DNA of 64,000 nucleotides from IMG/VR virus record IMGVR_UViG_3300044591_002232, positions 1-64,000 of that record; one strand, 5' to 3'. The first letter of the stretch is position 1. Each line of letters begins with the position of its first letter. The notes beneath the pieces were generated by a model, which worked only from the letters and a program-made list of their open reading frames with translations, did no database searches and was not told the DNA's origin. Positions 1 to 51,250 of the stretch are shown here, piece by piece. Both the position numbers and the translations under genes were made by a program.

Positions 1-2
1 AG

Positions 3-733
3 GGCAATTTAGGTATCCAAGGAACAATAGGTCCACAGGGTATCCAAGGTATTCAAGGAATTCAGGGCAATTTAGGTATCCAAGGAACAATAGGTCCACA
101 GGGTATCCAAGGTATTCAAGGAATTCAAGGAATTCAGGGAATTCAAGGAATTCAGGGCAATTTAGGTATCCAAGGTATTCAGGGTACTCAGGGTATTCAA
201 GGTATATCTGGTATTGTTGGTTCTATTGGCCCACAGGGTATCCAAGGTATCCAAGGTATTCAGGGTACTCAGGGTATTCAAGGTATATCTGGTATTGTTG
301 GTTCTATTGGCCCACAAGGTATCCAAGGTATCCAAGGTATTCAGGGTACTCAGGGTGTTCAAGGTATATCTGGTATTGTTGGTTCTATTGGCCCACAGGG
401 TATCCAAGGTATTCAGGGTACTCAGGGTATTCAAGGTATATCTGGTATTGTTGGTTCTATTGGCCCACAGGGTATCCAAGGTATTCAAGGTATTCAAGGT
501 ACTCAGGGTGTTCAAGGTATATCTGGTATTGTTGGTTCTATTGGCCCACAGGGTATCCAAGGTATTCAGGGTATTCAAGGTACTCAGGGTGTTCAAGGTA
601 TATCTGGTATTGTTGGTTCTATTGGCCCACAGGGTATCCAAGGTATTCAGGGTACTCAGGGTATTCAAGGTATATCTGGTATTGTTGGTTCTATTGGCCC
701 ACAGGGTATCCAAGGTATTCAGGGTATTCAAGG
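3..733 (+). repeat. Tandem collagen-coding repeat (9-nt subunits in 54-63 nt higher-order units)
   Basis: Recurrent caaggtatatctggtattgttggttctattggcccacagggtatc blocks with a variable number of GIQ/GTQ triplets between them. Confidence 0.95.
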
Positions 734-1328
734 AGCGTCTGCTTTTTCAAATGCGACCGTAAATAATTTAAATGTCACGGGTATTTCTACATTAGGAATA
801 GTCAGAATATCTTCAGGAGTTGTAACTGCCACTTCTGGTATTGTAACTTATTATGGAGATGGTTCAAATTTAACTGGAATTACTGATGGTAATGTGGGTC
901 TCGGCACCACTGGCACACCGCAGTTTGCAGGGTTGGGTCTGGGCACGGCTGCCGTAGCCGGGTGGGAGCTGACGGTAGGGGGTGCCACCTGCCAGGTGCG
1001 GAATACGGTAACGGCGGTGAGCAATGTTTACTCGTTGGATGTGCAGGCTGCCAACGAGTTTGTTACTGCTGCAGCGATTGCAGAGGCAACTACGATTAAC
1101 CTGTCTAATCTGACTACAATCCCGAGCGGGTATTTATGGCGCGGGGTGCTGAGTTTTCAGTATACATCCGGCACGATTTCATGGTTTACGGGAAATAGTG
1201 GTTACACGGTGAAATGGGACGGAGGTAGCGCAATGACACCAACAGAAAATGAAATAGAGACCGTGGTGATTACAGTCGTTGGTGGTCAGACCACAATTGA
1301 AATTGCACCACTTAAGGGGAGGGTCTGA
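3..1328 (+). CDS. Collagen-like tail fibre protein, 5'-partial (ORF begins before the window)
   Basis: The frame starting at base 3 reads GNLGIQGTIGPQGIQG... with about 80 Gly-X-Y triplets to ~733, then NVTGISTLG...TYYGDGSNLTGI (cyanophage tail-fibre motif). It runs in frame into track ORF 894..1328. Confidence 0.85.
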   Translation, partial: GNLGIQGTIGPQGIQGIQGIQGNLGIQGTIGPQGIQGIQGIQGIQGIQGIQGNLGIQGIQGTQGIQGISGIVGSIGPQGIQGIQGIQGTQGIQGISGIVGSIGPQGIQGIQGIQGTQGVQGISGIVGSIGPQGIQGIQGTQGIQGISGIVGSIGPQGIQGIQGIQGTQGVQGISGIVGSIGPQGIQGIQGIQGTQGVQGISGIVGSIGPQGIQGIQGTQGIQGISGIVGSIGPQGIQGIQGIQGASAFSNATVNNLNVTGISTLGIVRISSGVVTATSGIVTYYGDGSNLTGITDGNVGLGTTGTPQFAGLGLGTAAVAGWELTVGGATCQVRNTVTAVSNVYSLDVQAANEFVTAAAIAEATTINLSNLTTIPSGYLWRGVLSFQYTSGTISWFTGNSGYTVKWDGGSAMTPTENEIETVVITVVGGQTTIEIAPLKGRV

Positions 1329-1330
1329 TC

Positions 1331-2371
1331 ATGCTGAGACGTAGTGCGTTGCTGGCAGCAACGAATAGTGGTGGGCCGCCGGGGTTTGGGGTCAAGTACA
1401 CGAATCCTGCAACTCTGCCTACGGGCACCGGCTTCGGTGTTGCATTTTCCCCTGCTGGTGATGCTATTGCAGTGGCTCATTTCATCTCCCTATTTATCAC
1501 CGCCTATCCCTGGTCAGCATCTGGCTTCGGCACGAAGTACACCAATCCCGCGACGCTGCCTACGGGCACTGGCTGGGACGTTGCATTTTCTCCGGCTGGT
1601 GATGCTATTGCAGTGGCGCATAACAGCTCTCCATTTATCACCGCCTATCCCTGGTCAGCATCTGGCTTCGGCACAAAGTACACCAATCCCGCGACGCTGC
1701 CTACGAGCACTGGCTGGGACGTTGCATTTTCCCCTGCTGGTGATGCTATTGCAGTGGCGCATAACGGCTCTCCATTTATCACCGCCTATCCCTGGTCAGC
1801 ATCTGGCTTCGGCACAAAGTACACCAATCCCGCGACGCTACCTACAGGCGACAGCTTCGGCGGCGTTGCATTTTCTCCGGCTGGTGATGCTATTGCAGTG
1901 GCTCATGGCAGCTCCCCATTTATTACCGTCTATCCCTGGTCAGCATCTGGCTTCGGCACAAAGTACACCAATCCCGCGACGCTGCCTACAGGCGACAGCT
2001 GGGGCGTTGTATTTTCCCCTGCTGGTGATGCTATTGCAGTGGCTCATGACAGCTCCCCATTTATTACCGTCTATCCCTGGTCAGCATCTGGCTTCGGCAC
2101 GAAGTACACGAATCCTGCAACTCTGCCTACGGGCACCGGCTTCGGTGTTGCATTTTCCCCTGCTGGTGATGCTATTGCAGTGGCTCATGGCAGCTCTCCA
2201 TTTATCACCGCCTATCCCTGGTCAGCATCTGGCTTCGGCACAAAGTACACCAATCCCGCGACGCTGCCTACAGGCGACGGCCTCGGCGTTGCATTTTCTC
2301 CGGCTGGTGATGCTATTGCAGTGGCTCATGGCAGCTCCCCATTTATTACCGCCTATCCCTGGAACTCCTAA
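1331..2371 (+). CDS. 7-bladed beta-propeller (WD40-like) protein, probable receptor-binding or tail-tip protein
   Basis: Seven near-identical 47-48 aa repeats GFGTKYTNPATLPT..VAFSPAGDAIAVAH..SPFITAYPW; follows the tail-fibre gene. Confidence 0.85.
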   Translation: MLRRSALLAATNSGGPPGFGVKYTNPATLPTGTGFGVAFSPAGDAIAVAHFISLFITAYPWSASGFGTKYTNPATLPTGTGWDVAFSPAGDAIAVAHNSSPFITAYPWSASGFGTKYTNPATLPTSTGWDVAFSPAGDAIAVAHNGSPFITAYPWSASGFGTKYTNPATLPTGDSFGGVAFSPAGDAIAVAHGSSPFITVYPWSASGFGTKYTNPATLPTGDSWGVVFSPAGDAIAVAHDSSPFITVYPWSASGFGTKYTNPATLPTGTGFGVAFSPAGDAIAVAHGSSPFITAYPWSASGFGTKYTNPATLPTGDGLGVAFSPAGDAIAVAHGSSPFITAYPWNS

Positions 2372-2637
2372 TGAACAAGCTCTCCATTCTAACCACCGCC
2401 CTTGAAGGCCGCGATCACGAACTGCTCTCCTATCAAATCAACATCGACAACTACCGCCTGGCCATCGCCAAAATCAACGCCGACCACGCCGATAACGATG
2501 ATTTGCTTTCATTCCGTGATGATCTGCAGGCTCGCCTTGACGAAGAACTCCACCAGCATCTTCGCGCTCGCATCATCCGCGATGTGATCGCGGAGCAAGT
2601 TGCCGAGCTGTCCACCCAGGAGGAACTAATCTCATGA
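2371..2637 (+). CDS. Hypothetical helical protein of the tail cassette
   Basis: 88-aa ORF translationally coupled (TAATG, ATGA overlaps) to both neighbours. Confidence 0.75.
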   Translation: MNKLSILTTALEGRDHELLSYQINIDNYRLAIAKINADHADNDDLLSFRDDLQARLDEELHQHLRARIIRDVIAEQVAELSTQEELIS

Positions 2638-3203
2638 ACTACGTCCACATCGCTGCAGACGGTCAGCCCGAGTACCCTTACAACCTCTGGCAGCTCCGCA
2701 AAGCACACCCCAACATCTCATTCCCCGCTGAACCCACCCCGGAAGACCTGGCGCCCTTCCACGTCTTTCCGGTCACCATCAACCCTCAGCCCGATGGTTA
2801 CGACCACCGCCTGCAGATCGTTGAGCAGATCCCGCCAACCATCACCGCTGATGGCTGGGTGATCAATTGGGCACTGCGCGACACCACCCCAGAGGAACAG
2901 GCCAGCTACGACGCTGCCCACACTCCCGAACCTCAGTGGATGGGTTTCGGTATCGAGCTGGCGGTTAACCCCGCCATCACCGAACTGTACGACAGCATCC
3001 CCACCGCACTGGCCAATGGCCTGAGCATCGGCCTGTCTGAAGCCAGCAAGGGCGACACCCGCTTATTCATCGGTTTGTGGCAGCGAGTTTTAGCCACTGG
3101 TGGGGTTTCTCCCGAGCTACTGGGAGAAATCGGCGCTCTGGCCCATCAGTTCAACCTGCCGACCAGTTTCGTTGCTCAGATGATGCCACCGAACAATGAA
3201 TAA
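2634..3203 (+). CDS. Probable tail-fibre assembly/chaperone-like protein
   Basis: YPYNLWQLRKAHPNISFP...W N-terminus resembles phage tail-associated proteins; last gene of the GC-rich cassette. Confidence 0.55.
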   Translation: MNYVHIAADGQPEYPYNLWQLRKAHPNISFPAEPTPEDLAPFHVFPVTINPQPDGYDHRLQIVEQIPPTITADGWVINWALRDTTPEEQASYDAAHTPEPQWMGFGIELAVNPAITELYDSIPTALANGLSIGLSEASKGDTRLFIGLWQRVLATGGVSPELLGEIGALAHQFNLPTSFVAQMMPPNNE

Positions 3204-3241
3204 CCGCAGTGATCCGAAAAAATCTATCGGTTTACTAAACT

Positions 3242-3249
3242 TATAAATA
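3242..3249 (+). promoter_or_regulatory. T4-type late promoter TATAAATA
   Basis: Exact T4 late consensus 22 nt before the ATG at 3271. Confidence 0.7.
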
Positions 3250-3270
3250 AACAAAACTTATAATGTCCTC

Positions 3271-4251
3271 ATGAATTTCGTTAAATATGCATTGGAGAAT
3301 GGTGGAACAATTAAACCTCTACTTATAAACCCAGAAGACCTTTCGGGACCATCAATCACAAATCCTTCTGTCTTCATTTATCAGAACAGAATATTAGTCA
3401 ATCTTCGTAATGTAAATTATACATTATATCACGCAGAACTCAATCGGTTTGAGCATATGTGGGGTCCATTATCCTACATTCATCCAGAAAATGATATGCA
3501 CCTGAGAACCACAAATTACATTGCAGAACTAGATGACAATCTAGATACGGTTCACTATTCAAAAATAGATACTTCAGACTTTGATACCTATCAACCACAG
3601 TGGGATTTCGTGGGCCTTGAAGATGTTCGGTTAGTAGAATGGAATGATAAACTCTATGGTATTGGTGTTCGCAGAGACTTAGACGACAAAGGAACCGGAA
3701 GAATGGAAATTAGTGAATTTCAGATTTCTGATTATTCGGTCAAAGAAGTTTTTCGTTATCGTATTCCTGGACCCCCCCCAGATAAAGAATACTGTATGAA
3801 AAACTGTACTCCAATTCTAGATAAACCTTTTCATTTATTAAAGTGGTCTAATCCCACTGCACTAATGAAATTTGATATTACTGGAAAGGAAACAGAAGTC
3901 TTTCAAACTGACCCAAATCCTACTCTACAAACTGACCTAAGAGGTGGTTCTCAGGTAATTCCTTATAAAAACGGATACTTATCACTTCTTCACGAGACAC
4001 ATCTTTATAATTCAGAACAAGGAAGAAAAAACGCGACTTATCGCCATCGGTTTGTAATTTGGGATAAGGAATTTAAACTTCAAAAAGTATCAAAATTATT
4101 TTCGTTTATGAATATAAAAATTGAGTTTTGTTGTGGTCTTGTAGAATATAAAAATGATTACTTGATTACTTTTGGTGCTCAAGATAATGCTGCTTATATT
4201 TTAAAAGTTTCTAAATCATTTGTGGAGGATTTTATTCATGAACAAACTTGA
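3271..4251 (+). CDS. Beta-propeller glycoside hydrolase/phosphorylase-like protein (GH130/GH43-like clan)
   Basis: Motifs NPSV, GLEDVRL, KNCTP, LRGGSQ, IEFCCG and FGAQD are characteristic of this 5-blade family. Confidence 0.65.
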   Translation: MNFVKYALENGGTIKPLLINPEDLSGPSITNPSVFIYQNRILVNLRNVNYTLYHAELNRFEHMWGPLSYIHPENDMHLRTTNYIAELDDNLDTVHYSKIDTSDFDTYQPQWDFVGLEDVRLVEWNDKLYGIGVRRDLDDKGTGRMEISEFQISDYSVKEVFRYRIPGPPPDKEYCMKNCTPILDKPFHLLKWSNPTALMKFDITGKETEVFQTDPNPTLQTDLRGGSQVIPYKNGYLSLLHETHLYNSEQGRKNATYRHRFVIWDKEFKLQKVSKLFSFMNIKIEFCCGLVEYKNDYLITFGAQDNAAYILKVSKSFVEDFIHEQT

Positions 4252-6130
4252 AGGACTTCCAACTATTCATTACATTAGTTTAGAAGAAAGCCTAGACAGA
4301 AGAACTAATTTAGAAAATTGGTTTCAAAAATATAATATAACAAACTATGTTCCTCATTTATTCAAAAGATTTGAAAATTATAATCATAATTTAATCGGAA
4401 CAAATGTGCATCTTTTGGCGGAACATTCAAAAGGTCCGATTACTTCTCATTTATGTTTACTCAGGGAATTATACGAGACTTATGATGATGAATATTTTTT
4501 GATTGTTGAAGACGATTTGTCTTTAGAAACTGTTGAACACTGGAACTTTACCTGGAAGCAATTCTATCAAAATCTTCCTAAAGATTGGAATGGTATTCAA
4601 TTAACTATTGTAAGAGAATATAATGTTAAAGCGTATTCTTTTGAAGAAAGAAGAGATAAAGACTGGTGTGTTGCTGGGTATTTAATAAAAAGAAACTATG
4701 CAAAATATCTCTTAGACTTATATTATTTTGATACTGATTTTAATCTAAACACTAGTTTTATTCCCGTAGTTGAGGACGTATTATTTTTTCATACTAATCC
4801 AAACATATATTGTTTTCCTTTATTTGTTGAGGATTTTTATAATGCAAAATCAACTTACAGAAATCCAGAACTGGTAGATGATTGTCATCATAAATCTTAT
4901 CGTAATGTTTTAAATTGGTGGGAAAATAAAGGTAAAAATTTAACTATTAATCAAATAATGAATACACAACTTAATCACATTTATCAAGAACCTCAATTTG
5001 GTGAAAATTGGTTTTCATATCCAAATCTGTATAGGAAAATGATTGAAAAATTCCCATCAGGTTCCAAGTTTGTTGAAATTGGTTCTTGGAAAGGAAAATC
5101 TTCCGCATTTATGGCAGTTGAAATTGCAAATTCCAATAAAAACATTGAGTTCTATTGTGTAGATACTTGGGAAGGAAGTGTAGAGCATCAAGATATAGAC
5201 GATTTAAAATCTTTATATGACACATTTAACCAAAATATGATGCCTTTAAAAGGCTATCATATTCCTTTAAGAATGACTTCACTTGAAGCGGTAAAAACTT
5301 TTGAAGATAAGTCTTTAGATTTTGTTTTTATTGATGCTTCTCACGAATATGAAGACGTGAAAAAAGATATTATTTCTTGGTTACCTAAGGTAAAACCAGG
5401 TGGAATTATTGCCGGACACGATTACTATCTTAATGGGACTGACTTTTTCCCTGGAGTAAAGCAAGCGGTTAATGAGACACTAAAAATTGATGAATTAGAA
5501 TTTTCTGAAGATTGTTGGATGTATAAAGTAAAATCTATATCTAATGAATTAATAGAATATTCATTAGATACTGAAAATGCGGAAAAAAATTATAATCTCG
5601 CAAAGTGGTATGAAAGTCAGGGTCATACTGCACCAGCACATATCTATTACTTGAGAGCAGCAGAAAGAAGTGAAGATAATCTTTTGGCATACTCCGCATT
5701 AATTCGTGGGTCATTCTGCTATGGGGCACAAAAATCAAGAGATTCTAGTGAAAAAGTATTACTAGAAAATGCTCTTGTGTTGCTACCCAAAAGACCCGAA
5801 GCATATTATTTTCTTTCGTTGATATATGAAAGAAAACAAGAATGGCAACATTCTTACATTTATGCAACACTAGGTCTAAATTGCTATGAAAATAACGATG
5901 AATGCATAAACATTAATATTCCAGAATATTCCGGGAAACATTTGCTTATTTTTCAAAAGGCAATTTCTTCTTGGTGGTGGGGAAAAGGAGATGAAAGTAG
6001 AGGACTTTTAGAATTATTATGCGATAATTATTGGAATGTTTTAGATGTGACACATAAATCTTTAGTCGAAGAAAACGCAAAAAAAGTTGGAGCAAAATTT
6101 GAAAAAAGACTACATTTCAACTTTCAGTAA
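4238..6130 (+). CDS. Fusion: GT25-like glycosyltransferase + class I SAM methyltransferase + TPR
   Basis: ATG 4238 follows a GGAGG RBS. GT25-like motifs YISLEESLDRR and LIVEDD; MTase motifs VEIGSWKGKSS, FVFIDASHEY and AGHDY; C-terminal TPR-like helices (PKRPEAYYFLS). Confidence 0.8.
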   Translation: MNKLEGLPTIHYISLEESLDRRTNLENWFQKYNITNYVPHLFKRFENYNHNLIGTNVHLLAEHSKGPITSHLCLLRELYETYDDEYFLIVEDDLSLETVEHWNFTWKQFYQNLPKDWNGIQLTIVREYNVKAYSFEERRDKDWCVAGYLIKRNYAKYLLDLYYFDTDFNLNTSFIPVVEDVLFFHTNPNIYCFPLFVEDFYNAKSTYRNPELVDDCHHKSYRNVLNWWENKGKNLTINQIMNTQLNHIYQEPQFGENWFSYPNLYRKMIEKFPSGSKFVEIGSWKGKSSAFMAVEIANSNKNIEFYCVDTWEGSVEHQDIDDLKSLYDTFNQNMMPLKGYHIPLRMTSLEAVKTFEDKSLDFVFIDASHEYEDVKKDIISWLPKVKPGGIIAGHDYYLNGTDFFPGVKQAVNETLKIDELEFSEDCWMYKVKSISNELIEYSLDTENAEKNYNLAKWYESQGHTAPAHIYYLRAAERSEDNLLAYSALIRGSFCYGAQKSRDSSEKVLLENALVLLPKRPEAYYFLSLIYERKQEWQHSYIYATLGLNCYENNDECININIPEYSGKHLLIFQKAISSWWWGKGDESRGLLELLCDNYWNVLDVTHKSLVEENAKKVGAKFEKRLHFNFQ

Positions 6131-6279
6131 ATCAAAATAATTCGTATTATGCAAATTCTACTTCTTTAAATTTTGTTCCAAGGGTGGACGGAGGCCCAAT
6201 TAAACAAAATTGGTTAAGAAGAATTATATACTGGCCTAAACGTTTACCAAATGAACAACTCCAGGCATTAACCAGGTAG
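6103..6279 (+). pseudogene. Relic C-terminus of a LamG/ConA-like tail protein
   Basis: Start-less open frame ending ...WLRRIIYWPKRLPNEQLQALTR*, a C-terminal motif I recall from cyanophage tail proteins. Confidence 0.45.
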
Positions 6280-6356
6280 ACACTTTATAAATCGTCCACT
6301 AACTTAACATAAAGTCCAATAATCGTCTATTATTCTGCTATTCACCAAATTTTGTA

Positions 6357-7589
6357 ATGACCTCCATTATTCTTCGTCCTCATCAGGCGACGGCTCTTTC
6401 TTCTATGGGAGAAAACGATCTTGGTAAAATTATTCTTCCGACTGGTGCAGGTAAAAGTATTGTTTTTATCAAAAACACCATAGAGCAATTTAAATCTGAT
6501 ATTCCCCAGACTGTTTGCGTTGTTGCCCCAAGGATTCTCCTCGCGGTTCAACTTTCTGCTGATTACGAAAAGCACGTTAATAATGCGAAATATATGCATG
6601 TGCATTCTGGTAGTCGGCTAAGAAACTACCGCACTACCAATATAAAAGATATTCAAGAGTGGCATAATATCCATAAAGATGATCATAAACTTATTTTTAC
6701 TTCTTATAATTCCCTGAAGAAAATCACCGAGTCAAATATTAAGGTGAACACCTACAATTTTGATGAATGTCACAATTCTACTAAGAAGTCCTTCTTTCCA
6801 CACATTGAAGATGCAGTAAGGGAAGCAGACAAGAAGTACTTTTTTACTGCCACTCCTAAGAACTCTGCAATTCCAACAAAAAAACCCGGAATGAATATTG
6901 CCGAGGTTTATGGTCATGATATTTGTAAGATTCCTATGACCGAGATGGTATATGGTGGTTATGTTTTGCCTCCATTGGTGGTTAAGAAGGAAGTGAATAT
7001 TGAAGAAAGTATGGATGAAATGAATAATAATCTGATTCTAAAAACCTTGGACGAGGATACTCCCAAGAAGGTTCTTATTTCTGCGAAATCAACAAAATCA
7101 ATTATTTCTCTTCTTACTGAGACCGATTTTGTCTCTCAGATGAAGGACAGAGATTATAGTATTATGCATATAACTGCGGCTCACGGGGCATATATTGATG
7201 GTAAAGAGGTAAAGCGAGATGTGTTTTTTAGAACTTTGGATGAGTGGGGAAATGACGATTCTAAGAAGTTTGTTCTTCTTAACTACTCGATTCTTTCTGA
7301 AGGGATCAATGTCAATTCGTTGGATGCCGTGATCTTTATGAGAAATATGGATGCAATTGCCATGTTGCAAACCATTGGACGTGTGATCCGTCTTCATAAA
7401 GAAGATGCAGATCACATTGCTTCTGGTGAATTGCGGGTCGGGGATTATAAAAATTACAAGAAGCCTTATGGTATGGTAGTACTTCCTCACGGTGATTCCA
7501 AATCGAAATCAATTGCTTCCGATATTGAAAATTTAATTTATCGGTCATTTGTTGCAGGCGAAGTAGTTTCTCAGGAAATTGTAAAGTAG
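6357..7589 (+). CDS. Superfamily 2 (DEAD/DEAH-like, ResIII-type) helicase
   Basis: Q-motif LRPHQ, Walker A PTGAGKS, Walker B FDECH, motif III TAT, motif VI QTIGRVIR. Confidence 0.9.
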   Translation: MTSIILRPHQATALSSMGENDLGKIILPTGAGKSIVFIKNTIEQFKSDIPQTVCVVAPRILLAVQLSADYEKHVNNAKYMHVHSGSRLRNYRTTNIKDIQEWHNIHKDDHKLIFTSYNSLKKITESNIKVNTYNFDECHNSTKKSFFPHIEDAVREADKKYFFTATPKNSAIPTKKPGMNIAEVYGHDICKIPMTEMVYGGYVLPPLVVKKEVNIEESMDEMNNNLILKTLDEDTPKKVLISAKSTKSIISLLTETDFVSQMKDRDYSIMHITAAHGAYIDGKEVKRDVFFRTLDEWGNDDSKKFVLLNYSILSEGINVNSLDAVIFMRNMDAIAMLQTIGRVIRLHKEDADHIASGELRVGDYKNYKKPYGMVVLPHGDSKSKSIASDIENLIYRSFVAGEVVSQEIVK

Positions 7590-7684: not shown

Positions 7685-9010
7685 ATGTTCAAAATTTCTG
7701 AAAAAGCCAACCCTAATTATCTTGCGGAGATCGTTGTATTAAATAATCTGCGACCACACCCAAACGCAGATAGATTGCAAATCGCCACAATTCAAGGAAA
7801 TAGTGTGATTGTTTCTCTTGATGCCAAAGAAGGGGATGTTTATGTTTATTTCCCATTAGAGTGCGCCATAAATAAAGAATTTCTTTCTTGGAGTAATTCG
7901 TTTTCCGATAAGACACTTAATAACGACAAAGAAGTGGCTGGATTCTTTAATACGAAAGGTCGTGTGAGGGCAGTTAAACTCCGTGGAATCCCATCACAAG
8001 GTTATGCTCTTCCGGCCCAAAAATTTCTTGATTGGCTAGAAGAAAAGACTGGAAAATCCATTTCTCTTAAAGAAGAATGGATCGGAAAGGAGTTTGATTC
8101 ATATGATGATATTCTGATCTGTGAGAAATATGTAAGTCCTCTAGTCCTTAAAAATCAGAATAAAGAGAAAAAGAATCAAAAGAAAGTTGTTCGTGAGCCA
8201 AAAGTGGTGGACGGACAATTCCGCTTCCATCCTGATACTCTTCAACTGAAGAAATCTATTCATAATATCTCTCCAAATGATTATATTTCTATTACACGAA
8301 AACTTCATGGAACTTCCTGGGTGGCAAGTCGCCTTCTTTGTAATAAAAAACTGACTCGATTTGAAAAAATCCTGAAGCGTTTTGGTATCAAAATTCAAGA
8401 TACTCATTACGATCTTCTTTGGGCCTCTCGTAGAGTTCTAAAGAACGGTTTTCTAGAAATCGGGAATAAAGATCATTTCTATTCTTATGATCTCTGGGAA
8501 GAAATCGCCAAATCAGTCGAATATGCCATTCAAGATTCCATTACTCTTTATGGTGAAGCAGTGGGGTACACGAAAACCGGGGCGTACATTCAAACCGGAT
8601 ATGATTATGGCTGCCCCGCCGGGCAGTTTGCAACTTATGTCTACCGAATTACAACAACCAATCATTCTGGGCAGGTTTATGAATTTTCTCATAGGCAAGT
8701 CAAGGACTATTGCGAAAAATATGGTCTGAATATGGTTCCAGAGATTTATTATGGAAAAGCAAAGGACTTATATCCCGAACTTTCCGTGAATGATCATTGG
8801 CATCAAAACTTCCTTGATCGTCTTATTGGAGATTATCTTGAAAAAGACTGTGAACTGTGCAAATCTAAGAAAGTACCAGATGAAGGTGTCTGTCTAAGAA
8901 AGGATATTTTTGATTCTGAAATTTATAAACTAAAATCCTTCAAATTCCTAGAATGGGAAACTAAGGAATTGGACAACGAAAACTTTGTAGATTTGGAGTC
9001 AGAAAATTGA
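7685..9010 (+). CDS. ATP-dependent RNA ligase with N-terminal OB-fold (Rnl2/DRB0094-like)
   Basis: N-terminal PHPNADRL; nucleotidyltransferase motifs KLHGTS, LYGEAVG, EGVCLR and KLKS. Confidence 0.85.
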   Translation: MFKISEKANPNYLAEIVVLNNLRPHPNADRLQIATIQGNSVIVSLDAKEGDVYVYFPLECAINKEFLSWSNSFSDKTLNNDKEVAGFFNTKGRVRAVKLRGIPSQGYALPAQKFLDWLEEKTGKSISLKEEWIGKEFDSYDDILICEKYVSPLVLKNQNKEKKNQKKVVREPKVVDGQFRFHPDTLQLKKSIHNISPNDYISITRKLHGTSWVASRLLCNKKLTRFEKILKRFGIKIQDTHYDLLWASRRVLKNGFLEIGNKDHFYSYDLWEEIAKSVEYAIQDSITLYGEAVGYTKTGAYIQTGYDYGCPAGQFATYVYRITTTNHSGQVYEFSHRQVKDYCEKYGLNMVPEIYYGKAKDLYPELSVNDHWHQNFLDRLIGDYLEKDCELCKSKKVPDEGVCLRKDIFDSEIYKLKSFKFLEWETKELDNENFVDLESEN

Positions 9011-11702: not shown

Positions 11703-12275
11703 CAACTAACCCACAAAAAGGAGGGAACACCATGGAAACTCAGGTCATTGAGAAAAAGCAAGATTGGGAAATTCTTGAGTACCTTAATAGGGACGTAGAG
11801 GAAGAAGAAAATGAAGAGCCTTGCTATCCAGAATTTGATGACTGGGCAAGGTGACAATTGAAGAACTGTCCACTAATGGATAAAAAAGCAAAAATGCCTG
11901 TTAGGATCAAGAGGTCTAGAGAGAAGCTATCATCTTCTCTGATTGACGAACTTCTAGAGACTGATATTTTTCAGTCATCTGTCAAGGAAGAATTATCTTT
12001 AGAAGTAAAACAACTTCTAAAGGACTTTTAATTTATTATATTTGGAGTTATTTTTATGAACGAACAAGAAGCAATGGCGATTATTCGCTCTGGCAAAAAC
12101 GGCAGTCAAATTCTAGATCTTCTAGATAAGATTGTTTCTCTTTCCGATGTTGAAGAAACATCGTCAGAGGTTTCTGAAGAGATTGTGTTTGCCGACTGAC
12201 ACTTTTTAAACTGTCCACCGTATGCCCATTCTATTCGTAGGATGGGCTATTATTTTGGAAGTTCACTAAAGACTT

Positions 12276-12746
12276 ATGACTTCTAAATCTCAACTGCAAA
12301 CCAAAATTCAAGAACTGGAATCCGAGCTTCAAGAGTTCAAACAACAACTGAATAACTACAAAGAGACACCAACCATCGAAACCGCCAAAGTTGGTGATGT
12401 TCTAGAAGACGGTTGTATTGTACTCAAAAAAGAAAATGGTCTCGCTCTTTTGGTGGCCCCAAAATCAACCGAGGTTTATGATACTTGGAGTAAAGAGTTT
12501 TCAACAGTATTCAAGAAACTAGAAAAACAAGGATTTAATCCTTCTCAGTTCTTTATTCCAACCATGGATCAACTTAATCTTGCCTATAAGACCATTCCTC
12601 AACACTTCGCCAGCAACATCTATTGGTCTTCTACAGAGTTTAATGCTACGGGTGCTTACTATCAGGGCTTTAGCGGTGGTAGCATCTTCAGCTTCCGTAA
12701 GACGGCCGCGTGCAGTGTGCGTGCCTTCCGGTGTGTTACTTATTGA
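12276..12746 (+). CDS. DGR-target-like protein: coiled coil + C-type-lectin-fold (DUF1566-like) variable domain, copy 1
   Basis: C-terminus YWSSTE..A....F..G......K.....VRAFR is typical of DGR CLec targets; paralogue at 50780-51250. Confidence 0.8.
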   Translation: MTSKSQLQTKIQELESELQEFKQQLNNYKETPTIETAKVGDVLEDGCIVLKKENGLALLVAPKSTEVYDTWSKEFSTVFKKLEKQGFNPSQFFIPTMDQLNLAYKTIPQHFASNIYWSSTEFNATGAYYQGFSGGSIFSFRKTAACSVRAFRCVTY

Positions 12747-12935
12747 ACCTTGAATTTTGATACTTGATACTTAAGCAAAGTTATGAAATCATATTCAGCC
12801 CACTCGGACACCGAATTCTACGAGACAGACAATTTAAAAGAGGTAATTGAAGTTGCCCAGTCCATGGCCGAACATTTCGGCTCATCATACGTCATAAACA
12901 ACCAAACTAACGAAATTATTGAGAGGTTTTAAAAA

Positions 12936-48655: not shown

Positions 48656-48940
48656 ATGACTGACCCTATCCACATTGCACTAGACCGACTACATGACTAT
48701 GCAGTTGGCCATCCTAATCATGACACTGATGAGATAGTGGAAGCCGCCATCGCCGCCATCGCCGCCGAACGGGAAGCATGTGCGCGGATTTGTGATAAGC
48801 AATACGAAAGGGCACGAACCAGCACAGGTGCAGCACGAGCCGATGCCTGCGCCACGGCTATTCGCGCCCGCACCGCCCTGACAAAAGAACAATTTACCGC
48901 TTCTAGTCAGTTTATCGAAAAAGATGATGACCAAATTTAG
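48656..48940 (+). CDS. Chimeric hypothetical protein spanning the AT-to-GC junction
   Basis: AT-rich N-terminus, then GC-rich AIAAIAAEREACARIC. Confidence 0.6.
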   Translation: MTDPIHIALDRLHDYAVGHPNHDTDEIVEAAIAAIAAEREACARICDKQYERARTSTGAARADACATAIRARTALTKEQFTASSQFIEKDDDQI

Positions 48941-49448
48941 ACAGCTGCCTGGCCAAGATGTCTTAAGGGAGCTTTTCCGCTACAGCGACTCCGATGGCGC
49001 ATTGTTCTGGAAGTATCGCCATAACAGTCAAATCGATCTGAGCAAACCCGCTGGCTGGCTGCAGCAAAATGGCTATCACGGGATTGCTGTGAACGGAGTC
49101 AAGTACAAGAGACATCGTATCATCTGGTGTTTCTTTAATCGTGATCCCAGGGAAATGGAAGTGGATCATATTAACGGAATCAGGAATGATGATAGGATCG
49201 AGAATCTGAGATTGGCTACCCGAACTCAGAATCAATACAACCGTCCCGTCCTTTCTACCAATAAGTGCGGACTAAAAGGTGTTTCACCTCACCATAACAA
49301 GTGGCGTGCGCAAATTCAAGATAGCAATGGACGGAATAAGTTTTTAGGTACTTTTGCTACACCAGAAGACGCTGCAGCAGCCTACGCAAAGGCTGCTCTT
49401 GAGCTTCAGGGTCAGTTTGTCCACCAATCCCTTACCACTCATGTCTAG
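48924..49448 (+). CDS. HNH endonuclease with C-terminal AP2 domain (homing-endonuclease type)
   Basis: HRIIW, EVDHINGIRNDDRIENLRLAT, GVS..KWRAQI..FLGTF.TPEDAAAAY. Confidence 0.9.
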   Translation: MMTKFRQLPGQDVLRELFRYSDSDGALFWKYRHNSQIDLSKPAGWLQQNGYHGIAVNGVKYKRHRIIWCFFNRDPREMEVDHINGIRNDDRIENLRLATRTQNQYNRPVLSTNKCGLKGVSPHHNKWRAQIQDSNGRNKFLGTFATPEDAAAAYAKAALELQGQFVHQSLTTHV

Positions 49449-50124
49449 TCATCAGTTGCCCAGCAAAAATAACCACCCATCCCGCCCGGACCTGTCCAAA
49501 ATGACAAGCAATCTTTTATCGGATGGTGGCTACGAAGCCAGCTCAATGTGGACTGGCCATGGAACACGGCAGGTGGCCCAGCACGAGCCTGAGGTGGCGG
49601 GGCCAGTCACAGATGGCCGTCCCATGAACCAGTCTTACTGGTTGGCATTACTCAACCACGATGCCTATGCAGCATCATTCCAATCAGTGGGCCAGTACCG
49701 ATCAGCATTGATCGAACGTGCGTCATCACCACGGGCCCAGCCCGAGCGAGAGGGACCGACAGATGAAGAGTGGGAAGACCTAAAGGAGCGCCTGTGGGAT
49801 CAGTACCAAACCGTTGGTTATCAAGGCGAGCGCTTTATGTACGACGCCGATTTCTACACGGCGCTTGATGTTGCCCGCCAAGAGATCACCCGCCACGCCC
49901 GCCCCACCATCGAGCCGGTGCCCGTGGCTGAGCGGCTGCCGGGACCGGAGGATTGTGATGCCAAAGGAAGATGCTGGGTCGGATGCCCTGAATTCAGCGA
50001 CGACGGCGATTACGGACCGACCACGTTTAACCCATCTTGGGAGCTGGCACCTTTCGCCCAAGGGGACACCCACTGGCGCCCCCACAACGCCCTGCCGGTG
50101 CCCGGTGCGGAGGTGCAATCGTGA
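49441..50124 (+). CDS. GC-rich hypothetical protein with a DUF551-like C-terminus
   Basis: EPVPVAERLPGPEDCD..GRCW...THWRPH. Start at ATG 49441 or 49501 is uncertain. Confidence 0.65.
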   Translation: MSSHQLPSKNNHPSRPDLSKMTSNLLSDGGYEASSMWTGHGTRQVAQHEPEVAGPVTDGRPMNQSYWLALLNHDAYAASFQSVGQYRSALIERASSPRAQPEREGPTDEEWEDLKERLWDQYQTVGYQGERFMYDADFYTALDVARQEITRHARPTIEPVPVAERLPGPEDCDAKGRCWVGCPEFSDDGDYGPTTFNPSWELAPFAQGDTHWRPHNALPVPGAEVQS

Positions 50125-50779
50125 AGGTCGAAGACTTCAGAGCCAGCATCATCGCCGCAGCCGCTCTCCTTCCACCTGAGCCCCGAGGCCCAAAATCAGG
50201 CACGACCTGCCTCTATCGCGGTGGCGAGGTTCTGTGGTGGGCCGAGCCTGATCCATGGTCCCCCATTCTGTCGGTGCCCGGTGCCTGAGGGGGAGGTAAT
50301 GGCACGACCTTAGCCGAGAATGACACTTTAAGAACTGTCCACTTCTGACAAAATTCTAGAAATCCCTAGATACAATAAGATCAAATCAATTCAGGTTTCC
50401 AATGTCCCGCACCCATCGCCAAACTTCTTACAATAAATGTGCTCTTAGGAGCCCCAAAACCCTGAACGAAAAACGTCAAATTGATTCTTTTCTCACCGAT
50501 GATGAAACTGTGGAGTTTCAGATTTCTGGTATGAATAGGATCAAAAATCGCCGGTCCATTCCCACACATCACGACGACATTGTTTGTTCTTCTTATTATG
50601 AGACTGATTATGACCACCACTGAAAAAACTGCGTATTCTAAGTCTATGTTAGCAGATGCCGAAGATTTTCTCTGGAAAAACTTTGGTATCTCTGTAGGAA
50701 CCCCCGATTATGAATGGCCTCAAGATCAAATCATCTCAGAGGCTGTAAAACGCGGCTGGAAATTTAGTTTTTATTGATT

Positions 50780-51250
50780 ATGACAACCAAAACACAACTT
50801 CAAACCAAAATTCAAGAACTAGAAGAAGAACTTTCTTCTTTTAAACAACAATTGAATAACTATAAAAACCATCCAACTATTCAAGAGGCATCTGTAGGTG
50901 ACGTTCTTGAGGATGGCTGTATCGTCCTTAAAAAAGAAAATGGTGTCGCTCTTTTGGTGGCCCCAAAATCAACCGATGTTTATGCTACTTGGAGTAAAGA
51001 ATTCCCTAAATTCTTCAAGAAACTAGAAGAACAAGGATTTAATCCTTCTCAGTTCTTTATTCCAACCATGGATCAACTTAATCTTGCCTATAAGACCATT
51101 CCTCAACACTTCACCAGGACCATCTATTGGTCTTCTACAGAGTTTAATGCTACGGGTGCTTACTGTCAGGGCTTTAGCGGTGGTAGCATCTTCAGCTTCA
51201 GTAAGACGATCAAGAACAGCGTGCGTGCCTTCCGGTGTGTTACTTATTGA
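50780..51250 (+). CDS. DGR-target-like CLec/DUF1566-like protein, copy 2
   Basis: Paralogue of 12276..12746; YWSSTE...VRAFRCVTY. Confidence 0.8.
   Translation: MTTKTQLQTKIQELEEELSSFKQQLNNYKNHPTIQEASVGDVLEDGCIVLKKENGVALLVAPKSTDVYATWSKEFPKFFKKLEEQGFNPSQFFIPTMDQLNLAYKTIPQHFTRTIYWSSTEFNATGAYCQGFSGGSIFSFSKTIKNSVRAFRCVTY

What the first reader, a model, noticed from the sequence alone, without database searches (positions are those of the whole stretch)
12276..12760. Remote DGR target: a 156-aa CLec-type protein with adenine-biased divergence from its paralogue 38 kb away
Seen: from codon 12609 to the stop, copies 1 and 2 (51113-51250) differ at 12 nucleotides. Nine have A in one copy and ten are at codon positions 1-2 (gcc/acc, aac/acc, tat/tgt, cgt/agt, gcc/atc, gcg/aag, tgc/aac). 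The flanking sequence is identical, including the 3' GTGCGTGCCTTCCGGTGTGTTACTTATTGAACCTTGA (IMH-like). The region is rich in NNC/NNT codons. Established: DGRs mutate template adenines in AAY codons of C-terminal CLec variable regions. Unusual: the targets are tiny early-promoter genes (coiled coil + lectin fold), not tail fibres, in an apparently lytic T4-like genome, and no RT, Avd or TR is in the window. Inference: a trans-acting DGR diversifies an intracellular binder, for example an anti-defence or host-takeover protein.
Basis: partly seen in the sequence, partly recalled or inferred. Interest (0 to 1): 0.8.

Follow-up and report, generated by a model that had tools for sequence, protein, structure and literature searches.

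The report
Orphaned DGR target genes in cyanophage
Three small lectin-like genes of a 250-kb freshwater cyanophage end in the hypervariable stretch that diversity-generating retroelements (DGRs) rewrite; sister phages rewrite this gene family with their own DGR, but no DGR was found in this genome, so here the variable ends look frozen and reshuffled by recombination.

Summary
Copies 12276-12746 and 50780-51250 differ at 12 bases in the last 138 nt, 9 involving A and 10 at codon positions 1-2, and the 3' 37 nt are identical. A third copy lies just outside the window.

The genes belong to a family of at least 755 protein clusters, each an N-terminal helix plus an Lcl_C/DUF1566 C-type-lectin-like domain. 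The C-terminus is a DGR variable region:
- Eleven hypervariable codons carry almost only AAY-accessible residues.
- It is DNA-homologous to the TR and VRs of a bAvd-TR-RT cassette in sister phages.
- Near-identical genomes differ at template-adenine positions only.
- On a 227-kb sister contig, four family VRs fit a sister TR with 1-3 non-adenine mismatches.

So the DGR-target reading holds for the family.

It does not hold as an active system in this genome:
- No RT, Avd or TR is in the window, and exact-pattern scans of the 249,820-bp contig found none.
- The site where sisters carry the cassette holds unrelated GC-rich DNA.
- The three VRs fit no known TR (8-10 non-adenine mismatches).
- Copies 1 and 2 share 8 of 11 hypervariable codons and are gene-conversion mosaics.
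- Copy 1's VR is unchanged in lake metagenomes from 2020 and 2024.

Most likely these are orphaned, frozen DGR targets.

The parts
12276..12746 (+). Copy 1 of the family called 'type B' here: 156 aa, N-terminal helix (aa 4-26) plus an Lcl_C/DUF1566 C-type-lectin-like domain (aa ~38-156)
   Evidence: ORF. 755 homologues. AF2 model with pLDDT 87; best PDB match is the Legionella Lcl C-terminal domain 8q4e, E 3.7e-5, TM 0.70. Pfam Lcl_C is below threshold (18 bits vs 34.9).
12609..12731 (+). DGR-type variable region of copy 1 (codons 112-152). Family hypervariable codons are 115, 126, 129, 131, 133, 134, 136, 138, 140, 144 and 146.
   Evidence: Entropy profile. Only 2 of 1342 residues at these codons are outside the AAY-accessible set. 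DNA alignment with sister TRs and VRs. 8 non-adenine mismatches to the best TR.
12717..12746 (+). IMH-like 3' end: the GC-rich 15-mer GTGCGTGCCTTCCGG (12717-12731), then a VR-specific tail and the stop codon
   Evidence: In ten sister DGRs, TR/VR homology ends right after CCGG; the TR continues AGTG and the VRs continue TGTG. The 15-mer occurs only 3 times in the 249,820-bp contig, all in VRs.
12200..12257 (+). Upstream regulatory cassette: motif CACTTTTTAAACTGTCCAC, a hairpin at 12224-12247, then a T-rich/TATTAT stretch
   Evidence: Motif found 12 times in the window against 0.18 expected. Terminator-like hairpin. Resembles the PeSL promoter-terminator cassettes of T4-type phages (PMC2839356, PMC4122927); function not tested.
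50780..51250 (+). Copy 2 of the family (156 aa). VR at 51113-51235, IMH-like end at 51221-51250.
   Evidence: It is a mosaic: it matches its orthologue L013 over most of the gene, but carries copy-1 states at the sites that distinguish copy 1 from L013 between codons ~97 and ~128.
12565..12660 (+). Approximate tract in which copy 1 and copy 2 share states that copy 2's orthologues in other strains lack (gene-conversion tract; its 3' end lies between codons 128 and 129)
   Evidence: Six-way alignment of copies and orthologues.
1..6357 (+). The site where sister phages carry the DGR module, without the module. It holds a collagen-like fibre gene end (1-1328), a GC-rich 346-aa repeat ORF (1331-2371), a 189-aa ORF (2634-3203), a GH130-like gene (3271-4251) and a methyltransferase-domain gene (4220-6130), followed by the UvsW-type helicase from 6357.
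   Evidence: Synteny with L188 and L209/L210. There, fibres are followed by a target, bAvd, TR, RT, a 2OG oxygenase, a sulfotransferase and further genes, then a 325-aa homologue of window 3271-4251 (71% aa). GC content is 54-57% at 1001-3000. Pfam. No RT, Avd, 2OG or sulfotransferase by tblastn.

Best explanation
The ORF at 12276-12746, its paralogue at 50780-51250 and a third copy at contig 68141-68611 belong to a large family of small phage proteins. Each has an N-terminal helix, probably an oligomerising coiled coil, and an Lcl_C/DUF1566 C-type-lectin-like binding domain. The last ~40 codons of this family are a genuine DGR variable region.

In sister phages of this freshwater T4-like cyanophage group, a bAvd-TR-RT cassette sits between the tail-fibre genes and the UvsW-type helicase. 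It rewrites an adjacent 156-aa target ('type A'). In at least one sister genome it also appears to rewrite several dispersed copies of this coiled-coil family ('type B') as non-adjacent targets. The mechanism is the standard one: error-prone reverse transcription at template adenines, then homing to the GC-rich IMH (inferred from the sequence pattern, not assayed).

The window's own genome appears to have lost that cassette, and unrelated GC-rich DNA occupies the site. Its three VRs are therefore orphans. They keep an intact IMH and the adenine-derived codon pattern, but since their last rewriting they have evolved by ordinary point mutation (including loss of both conserved cysteines in copies 1 and 2) and by gene conversion between paralogues and strains.

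Shown: homology, the family-wide pattern, TR fits, synteny, the mosaic structure, and absence of every pattern searched.
Inferred: loss rather than never having had the cassette, the frozen state, and the binding/adhesin role.
For: Family-level DGR signature:
- 11 codons have entropy of 2.5-3.5 bits and are flanked by invariant scaffold.
- Only 2 of 1342 residues there are K/E/Q/M/W, against 43% in variable N-terminal columns.
- VR divergence is saturated whatever the N-terminal divergence.

Sister DGRs:
- RT (RVT_1) and bAvd were confirmed on the L077 cassette and carry the same precomputed Pfam labels in the other cassettes.
- Cis VRs differ from their own TR at 10-18 adenines and 0-1 other positions.

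Type B genes as real targets elsewhere:
- L185 and L186 have identical flanks; 21 of 22 VR differences fall on TR adenines and none at third codon positions, as in a bona fide cis pair.
- Four VRs on the 227-kb contig fit TR_L204 with 1-3 non-adenine and 14-18 adenine mismatches.

No DGR found here:
- No TR-like repeat in the window.
- No RT, Avd, 2OG oxygenase or sulfotransferase in contig positions 1-78,608.
- The whole contig gave only the three VRs for the 18-mer TATTGGTCTTCTACAGAG and the 15-mer anchor.
- The whole contig gave nothing for an AAY-template pattern, RT N-terminal motifs, the DGR-RNA scaffold, or the TR/RT junction.
- The syntenic site lacks the module.

Frozen and mosaic state:
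- There are 8, 10 and 10 non-adenine mismatches to the best of ten TRs.
- Copies 1 and 2 share 8 of 11 hypervariable codons and the core QGFSGGSIFSF with L013/P0014; L009/P0002 have N at the seventh position.
- C128Y and C147S are non-adenine changes.
- The conversion mosaic is visible in the alignment.
- Copy 3, and the copy-1 locus of a 99.5%-identical strain, carry a different scaffold type with 10 third-position differences.
- The exact copy-1 VR is present in lake runs of 2020 and 2024.
Against: - Only 78.6 kb of the 249,820-bp contig could be read. The rest was tested only with exact patterns, which a divergent RT or an atypical template could escape.
- The contig starts inside a collagen-like fibre gene, so completeness is inferred from size alone (sister genomes are 244-247 kb).
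- The sequencing runs are held as contigs, which drop rare variants, and paralogues co-map. Low-level ongoing diversification cannot be excluded.
- A sibling template of the scaffold type of copies 1 and 2 (ACA/ACG/TTT/GGT) must exist or have existed somewhere, because L185/L186 look recently rewritten. It was not found.
- The IMH is intact, so the copies may still be competent targets.
- TR_L204 and the 227-kb contig come from two sister samples, not one molecule.
Confidence: 0.6

Rival explanations
1. The copies are active remote targets of a DGR encoded elsewhere in the same phage genome, beyond the window, and their differences record recent independent mutagenic homing.
For: - The IMH is intact and identical to that of active targets.
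- Family members on a sister contig fit a sister template as non-adjacent targets.
- 7 of 9 differences within codons 116-147 fall on template adenines.
- Most of the contig (positions 78,609-249,820) was tested only by exact patterns.
Against: - A cognate template must contain the 18-mer TATTGGTCTTCTACAGAG, because every A in a VR must be an A in the TR. The contig has only the three VR copies of it.
- Five further independent pattern scans were negative.
- The module is absent at the conserved site.
- Independent homing would randomise the 11 hypervariable codons, but 8 of them are shared.
- 5 of the 12 differences and two shared scaffold changes are at non-adenine positions.
- Two incompatible scaffold types coexist among the three VRs.
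Confidence: 0.1
2. Diversification in trans across genomes. The DGR-less phage keeps IMH-bearing genes that are rewritten, occasionally, by the DGR of a co-infecting sister phage, or that import freshly diversified VR cassettes from such phages by recombination.
For: - DGR-bearing and type-B-bearing contigs co-occur in sister samples (3300075146 and 3300075147).
- The 227-kb contig holds VRs of two scaffold types.
- The copy-1 locus of a 99.5%-identical strain holds a wholly different VR cassette between identical flanks.
- The IMH is conserved at the DNA level across lineages with about 36% protein identity.
Against: - No sampled template fits the window's VRs.
- Cassette exchange by plain homologous recombination explains the strain differences without any RT step.
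- The copy 1/2 VR lineage has persisted unchanged across strains and years.
Confidence: 0.2
3. No retroelement history. The copies are ordinary paralogues whose binding loops diverged under diversifying selection.
For: The share of copy 1/copy 2 differences that involve an A is no higher than in the rest of the gene (p=0.33).
Against: - The residue repertoire at the hypervariable codons is confined to the NNY set derived from AAY.
- There are no third-position changes in L185/L186.
- The VRs are DNA-homologous to real templates.
- Cognate fits to a template have only 1-3 non-adenine mismatches.
Confidence: 0.03

Closest known systems
Bordetella phage BPP-1 DGR (Mtd target, bAvd, TR, Brt)
   Same: The sister phages have the same cassette logic: a target with a C-terminal VR, then bAvd, a TR directly upstream of the RT, adenine-only TR-to-VR differences, a GC-rich IMH at the VR 3' end, and a position next to tail-fibre genes.
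   Different: The host phage is a ~250-kb T4-like cyanomyovirus relative rather than a temperate podovirus. The RT is at most ~40% identical to any RT in isolate phage genomes. The VR fold is the DUF1566/Lcl_C class, not Mtd. There are many dispersed small targets. In the window's genome the cassette was not found at all.
Legionella pneumophila DGR / LdtA and the CLec2 (DUF1566) class of DGR targets (Wu et al. 2018, PMC5758913)
   Same: The VR lies on a DUF1566-type C-type-lectin-like domain. About half of that class are short proteins made of the domain alone. Conserved cysteines are a feature of the class.
   Different: There is no lipoprotein signal; an N-terminal coiled-coil helix takes its place. 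The genes are phage-borne and multi-copy. Copies 1 and 2 have lost two of the conserved cysteines.
DGRs with several non-adjacent targets (Treponema denticola, cyanobacterial DGRs; PMC4891356, PMC7517822, PMC5758913)
   Same: One template appears to serve several targets kilobases apart. At least four type B VRs on one sister contig fit one TR.
   Different: Those are cellular DGRs. For phage-associated DGRs, Wu et al. report non-adjacent targets in nearly all cases within 50 kb of the RT, and remote targets (>100 kb) in only one possibly phage-associated case. Here the window's genome carries the targets without the DGR.
PeSL promoter-terminator cassettes and modular shuffling in T4-type phages (PMC2839356, PMC4122927)
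   Same: The family copies sit among small ORFs in hyperplastic regions, flanked by a repeated motif-plus-hairpin cassette. Copies and VR cassettes are exchanged between loci and strains.
   Different: The motif sequence differs, and its promoter or terminator activity is untested. Much of the exchange seen here is within the gene (conversion tracts), not at cassette borders.
Legionella Lcl C-terminal domain (PDB 8q4e) and Bdellovibrio Bd2740 fibre-tip domain (8oks)
   Same: These are the best structural matches to residues ~35-156 (E 3.7e-5, TM 0.70; E 6e-3). Both are surface adhesin tips on oligomeric stalks.
   Different: Sequence identity is 24% or less, and no ligand is known here.

Membership tests
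DGR target gene (variable region) | The VR differs from a cognate TR only at TR adenines | tested here: not met
   Window copies 1, 2 and 3 have 8, 10 and 10 non-adenine mismatches to the best of ten clade TRs, and the contig holds no TR. The feature is met by other family members: four VRs on the 227-kb contig have 1-3 non-adenine and 14-18 adenine mismatches to TR_L204.
DGR target gene (variable region) | A DGR-type RT (with Avd) in the same genome | tested here: not met
   tblastn with three clade RTs plus an Avd, a 2OG oxygenase and a sulfotransferase against contig positions 1-78,608 gave nothing. Scans of IMG/VR for RT motifs, the DGR-RNA scaffold and the TR/RT junction never hit this contig. 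The syntenic site lacks the module. Sensitivity beyond position 78,608 is limited to exact patterns.
DGR target gene (variable region) | An IMH-type GC-rich element at the 3' end of the VR, where TR homology stops | tested here: met
   GTGCGTGCCTTCCGG lies at 12717-12731 and 51221-51235. In ten sister DGRs, TR and VR diverge directly after CCGG.
DGR target gene (variable region) | Hypervariability confined to codons derived from AAY, with an invariant scaffold | tested here: met
   For the family: 11 codons, with 1340 of 1342 residues in the AAY-accessible set. For the copy 1/copy 2 pair alone it is only weakly met: 7 of 12 differences fall on TR adenines.
DGR target gene (variable region) | Ongoing diversification at this locus (population variants at adenine positions) | tested here: inconclusive
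   Contigs from four lake runs show the exact copy-1 VR in 2020 and 2024, and only a few discrete alleles that match paralogues. Contigs drop rare variants, and no raw reads were available.
Lcl_C / DUF1566 (PF07603) C-type-lectin-like domain | Sequence match above the Pfam gathering score | tested here: not met
   18.1 and 16.9 bits against a cut-off of 34.9, covering only the last 46 residues. One family member carries a precomputed PF07603 hit.
Lcl_C / DUF1566 (PF07603) C-type-lectin-like domain | Fold match to a solved member | tested here: met
   AF2 model with pLDDT 87.4. Foldseek top hit is 8q4e, the Lcl C-terminal domain (E 3.7e-5, TM 0.70), followed by Bd2740 and C-type lectin-like proteins. 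BFVD hits are DUF1566 phage and fibre proteins.
T4-like cyanomyovirus (Synechococcus phage B3/B23 group) | Core genes most similar to that group | tested here: met
   The UvsW-type helicase is 70% identical to B3 and B23 and ~44% to marine T4-like cyanophages. B3 and B23 lack both the family and the RT.

The most novel reading that the evidence does not exclude
DGR-less phages keep IMH-bearing 'landing-pad' genes that are rewritten in trans by the retroelement of co-infecting sister phages. On this reading a mutator cassette carried by only part of a lytic cyanophage population would diversify a multi-copy binder family across the whole population, and the copies in this window would still be live targets.
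Probability: 0.15. Interest if true: 0.85.

Novelty: new variant of a known kind. Interest (0 to 1): 0.55.

Why it matters
DGRs in phages are known mainly as single-target devices for tail-fibre tropism switching in temperate phages. This evidence points to a DGR clade in ~250-kb T4-like cyanophage relatives from lakes with three unusual properties:
- It appears to serve a cis target next to the fibre genes.
- It also appears to serve a multi-copy family of small coiled-coil lectin-like proteins scattered through the hyperplastic regions. At least five VR-bearing copies lie on one sister contig, and four of them fit one template.
- The cassette can be missing while the targets stay behind.

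Comparing genomes that have the cassette with genomes that do not, in the same lakes, offers a natural experiment on three questions. What happens to a variable region once the mutator is gone? Does recombination substitute for retrohoming? Can a DGR act across co-infecting genomes?

The finding also flags a large, unannotated family (at least 755 clusters at 90% identity) of probable phage binding proteins.

Tried and rejected
- Both scans of the JGI metagenome-contig collection were uninformative. The collection holds only one VR of this family, so finding no template there means little.
- Both genome-contig scans, one with the VR anchors and one with the DGR-RNA scaffold, found nothing. No host-encoded template is evident in 185,579 species-representative genomes, but only exact patterns were used.
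- tblastn of the protein against isolate phage genomes gave no match. blastn gave only a 64-nt match to Synechococcus phages B3 and B23 in a neighbouring gene.
- The first RT search with a single protein missed close relatives. It was redone with a three-RT alignment.
- I first argued that a cognate template must carry the exact 15-mer anchor. This was weakened when near-cognate VRs turned out to differ from TR_L204 at codon 149 inside that element. The argument now rests on the 18-mer upstream anchor and the other scans.
- Read laying returned only assembler contigs that break inside the gene and mix paralogues. It shows presence of alleles, not within-population frequencies.
- A hairpin called at 12719-12736 relies on G-T pairs and was not taken as a DGR target-recognition structure.
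- Co-loss of Cys128 and Cys147 is not a strict rule in the family: 9 members are Y/C. I make no disulfide claim.
- I could not show a type B gene and a cognate TR on one contig. L209/L210 carry no type B gene within 21 kb.

Full report
**1. The observation**

The window equals positions 1-64000 of IMG/VR contig IMGVR_UViG_3300044591_002232, which is 249,820 bp long. Two 156-codon ORFs lie at 12276-12746 and 50780-51250. A third copy lies at contig 68141-68611.

From 12609 to the stop, the first two differ at 12 positions. Nine involve an A and ten are at codon positions 1-2. The last 37 nt are identical.

Its statistical weight is modest:
- The codon-position skew is significant against the rest of the gene (p=0.011).
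- The A involvement is not significant (p=0.33).
- The N-terminal third is far more divergent, with 44 differences, 27 of them at third positions.

**2. What the gene is**

The protein has at least 755 homologues at E<=0.001, nearly all 155-159 aa, from JGI, ENA and Logan metagenome data. None carries a functional name.

Pfam gives only a sub-threshold Lcl_C (DUF1566) hit over the last 46 residues. An AlphaFold2 model built on a 59-sequence alignment is confident (pLDDT 87.4). It shows a helix at residues 4-26 and a compact alpha/beta domain.

The best solved-structure match is the Legionella Lcl C-terminal domain (8q4e, E 3.7e-5, TM 0.70). Next come the Bdellovibrio Bd2740 fibre-tip domain and C-type-lectin-like proteins. 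Among predicted viral structures the matches are DUF1566 proteins and fibre-like proteins. 'CLec-type' is therefore right at the fold level.

**3. The family-wide signature**

In an alignment of 122 members, eleven codons have 2.5-3.5 bits of entropy between invariant scaffold positions (YWSS, G135, VRAFRC). They are 115, 126, 129, 131, 133, 134, 136, 138, 140, 144 and 146.

Of 1342 residues at those codons only 2 are K, E, Q, M or W. These are the residues that cannot arise from an AAY codon changed at its two adenines. In variable N-terminal columns the same residues make up 43%.

VR divergence is saturated at about 9 of 11 codons, even between proteins with identical N-terminal 111 residues. 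The 90% clustering of the database inflates that class somewhat.

**4. Real DGRs with homologous VRs**

The 15-mer GTGCGTGCCTTCCGG led to IMG/VR contig 3300032294_003113. There, two tandem 156-aa genes are followed by bAvd, a non-coding template and an RT (RVT_1). A third target lies elsewhere on the contig.

The template carries AAC or AAT at every hypervariable codon. The VRs differ from it only at adenines.

RT searches and context look-ups gave ten templates of one RT clade (61-100% identical, all ~343 aa). The clade always has the same order: fibre genes, target(s), bAvd, TR, RT, 2OG oxygenase, then a sulfo- or carbamoyl-transferase.

Their adjacent targets, called 'type A' here (N-terminus MGLxIGPT...), show 0-1 non-adenine and 10-18 adenine mismatches to their own TR. 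In one sample, six contigs with identical RT and TR carry twelve different VRs. That is an active system.

No isolate phage genome has an RT closer than ~40%.

**5. The coiled-coil family ('type B') is a target elsewhere**

L185 and L186 are the same locus in two sister samples. They have 0-1 differences in 900 nt upstream and none in 250 nt downstream, but about 30 in the VR. Within codons 116-147, 21 of 22 differences fall on template adenines and none at third codon positions. This is indistinguishable from a bona fide cis pair.

On the 227-kb contig Ga0645785_00217, at least five type B VRs occur. Four fit TR_L204, a template from the sister sample, with 1-3 non-adenine and 14-18 adenine mismatches. 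The recurrent mismatch is codon 149 (CGT/CGG), inside the GC-rich IMH part.

So this family does contain non-adjacent targets of a phage-encoded DGR. One caveat applies: template and targets come from sister samples, not from one molecule.

**6. This genome**

The phage is a T4-like cyanomyovirus relative. Its UvsW-type helicase is 70% identical to Synechococcus phages B3 and B23. L188, a 247-kb NCBI contig, is 65-80% identical in helicase, RNA ligase and HNH genes and carries the DGR module about 5 kb upstream of the helicase.

In L209/L210 the module is followed by a 325-aa gene that is 71% identical to window 3271-4251. In the window, the interval between the collagen-like fibre gene (ends at 1328) and 3271 holds only a 346-aa repeat ORF and a 189-aa ORF, in DNA of 54-57% GC. 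The phage background is about 36%.

Further negative results:
- There is no TR-like repeat in the window.
- There is no RT, Avd, 2OG oxygenase or sulfotransferase in contig positions 1-78,608.
- Across the whole contig, the 18-mer TATTGGTCTTCTACAGAG occurs only in the three VRs. A cognate template must contain it, because every A of a VR comes from an A of the TR.
- The 15-mer anchor, an AAY-template pattern, RT N-terminal motifs, the DGR-RNA scaffold and the TR/RT junction never hit this contig.

**7. State of the three VRs**

Against the best of ten templates they show 8, 10 and 10 non-adenine mismatches.

For copy 1, six of the eight are synonymous third positions (ACA, ACG, AAT-type, TTT, GGT, CGT). 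These define a sibling, unsampled template type, the same one implied by L185/L186. The other two are C128Y and C147S, scaffold changes a DGR cannot make.

Copy 3, and the copy-1 locus of a ~99.5%-identical strain (L003), carry a different scaffold type (GTG, GCG). They have 10 third-position differences from copy 1. One template could therefore never serve all three.

Copies 1 and 2 share 8 of 11 hypervariable codons. They share the core QGFSGGSIFSF with the copy-2 orthologue L013/P0014, and the other orthologue (L009/P0002) differs in it at one residue. This is incompatible with independent homing.

The six-way alignment shows that copy 2 matches its orthologue L013 over most of the gene. 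At the sites that separate copy 1 from L013 between codons ~97 and ~128, however, it carries copy-1 states. The differences downstream are largely the old copy-2 allele. L003 carries a copy-2-like patch in its N-terminus.

Contigs of four lake runs contain the exact copy-1 VR in 2020 and 2024, and only a few discrete alleles that match paralogues.

**8. Conclusion**

The predicted template shape was found almost as predicted, but in sister phages.

In this genome the best-supported reading is that the DGR module was lost or replaced. The three type B genes are orphaned, frozen variable regions. Their present differences are legacy adenine mutagenesis, overlaid by ordinary mutation and reshuffled by gene conversion.

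A role as an intracellular anti-defence binder has no support. Fold relatives, and the cis paralogues next to fibre genes, suggest an oligomeric adhesin-type binder. Neither virion association nor expression timing was tested.

The literature records non-adjacent targets for cellular DGRs. For phage-associated DGRs it records such targets within about 50 kb of the RT (PMC5758913). Large metagenome surveys did not score remote targets (PMC8144416). A multi-copy dispersed target family in a lytic T4-like cyanophage group, and its persistence without the retroelement, is therefore a new variant of a known system.

Noticed in passing
window 900-3203: A GC-rich block (54-57% GC against ~36%) covers the C-terminal end of the collagen-like fibre gene, a 346-aa ORF made of ~141-nt tandem repeats (1294-2442) and a 189-aa ORF. 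It sits exactly where sister phages carry the DGR module. It looks like a horizontally acquired fibre-tip or host-range module that replaced the DGR module.
   Followed up: partly
window 1-800: The contig starts inside a collagen-like (G-X-Y, 9-nt period) fibre gene with nested 72-81-nt repeats. This is a likely reason for the assembly break, so contig completeness is unproven.
   Followed up: no
window 6281, 7591, 11855, 12200, 22987, 23307, 33237, 48572(-), 50324, 51258, 54571, 63131, and the GGCACA variants in repeat families D6, D9-D11: An intergenic motif CACTTnnnnAACTG(T/G)CCAC, followed in many copies by a GC-rich hairpin and a T-rich or TATAAT-like stretch, occurs 12 times against 0.18 expected. 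It resembles the PeSL promoter-terminator cassettes that mediate modular shuffling in T4-type phages.
   Followed up: partly
window 48924-50400: An HNH_3 + AP2 homing-endonuclease-like gene (48924-49448) is followed by a GC-rich island (52% GC) with a 256-aa Pro/Arg/Ala-rich ORF (49354-50124) that has no Pfam match, just upstream of copy 2.
   Followed up: no
contig 68141-68611 (L002 10001-10471; L014 75-545): A third paralogue lies 4 kb beyond the window. Its VR has a different scaffold type (GTG130, TTA132, GCG137) and retains Cys128 and Cys147.
   Followed up: yes
window 12301-12320 vs L003 10026-10045: In an otherwise ~99.5%-identical strain, a 20-nt patch in the coiled-coil region of copy 1 carries copy-2-like sequence. 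This is a second, independent gene-conversion tract.
   Followed up: partly
L107 ~4879-5010 (IMGVR_UViG_3300045431_000534): The template of this sister DGR is adenine-poor (28% A; TAC, GAC, GCC, GTC where others have AAC). Its VR has 11 non-adenine mismatches to it. This looks like a decaying DGR in the same clade.
   Followed up: no
L193 3864-4335 and L211 ~8283-8775: Two VR-bearing genes in sister genomes are interrupted. The second cis target in L193 is called as 141 aa with an early stop. In L211 a VR at 8639 lies outside the called 85-aa gene. These may be casualties of mutagenesis or assembly errors.
   Followed up: no
L191 14516-15712: An IS605 OrfB / Cas12f-like TnpB gene sits 3.5 kb downstream of the RT in a 170-kb sister contig.
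   Followed up: no
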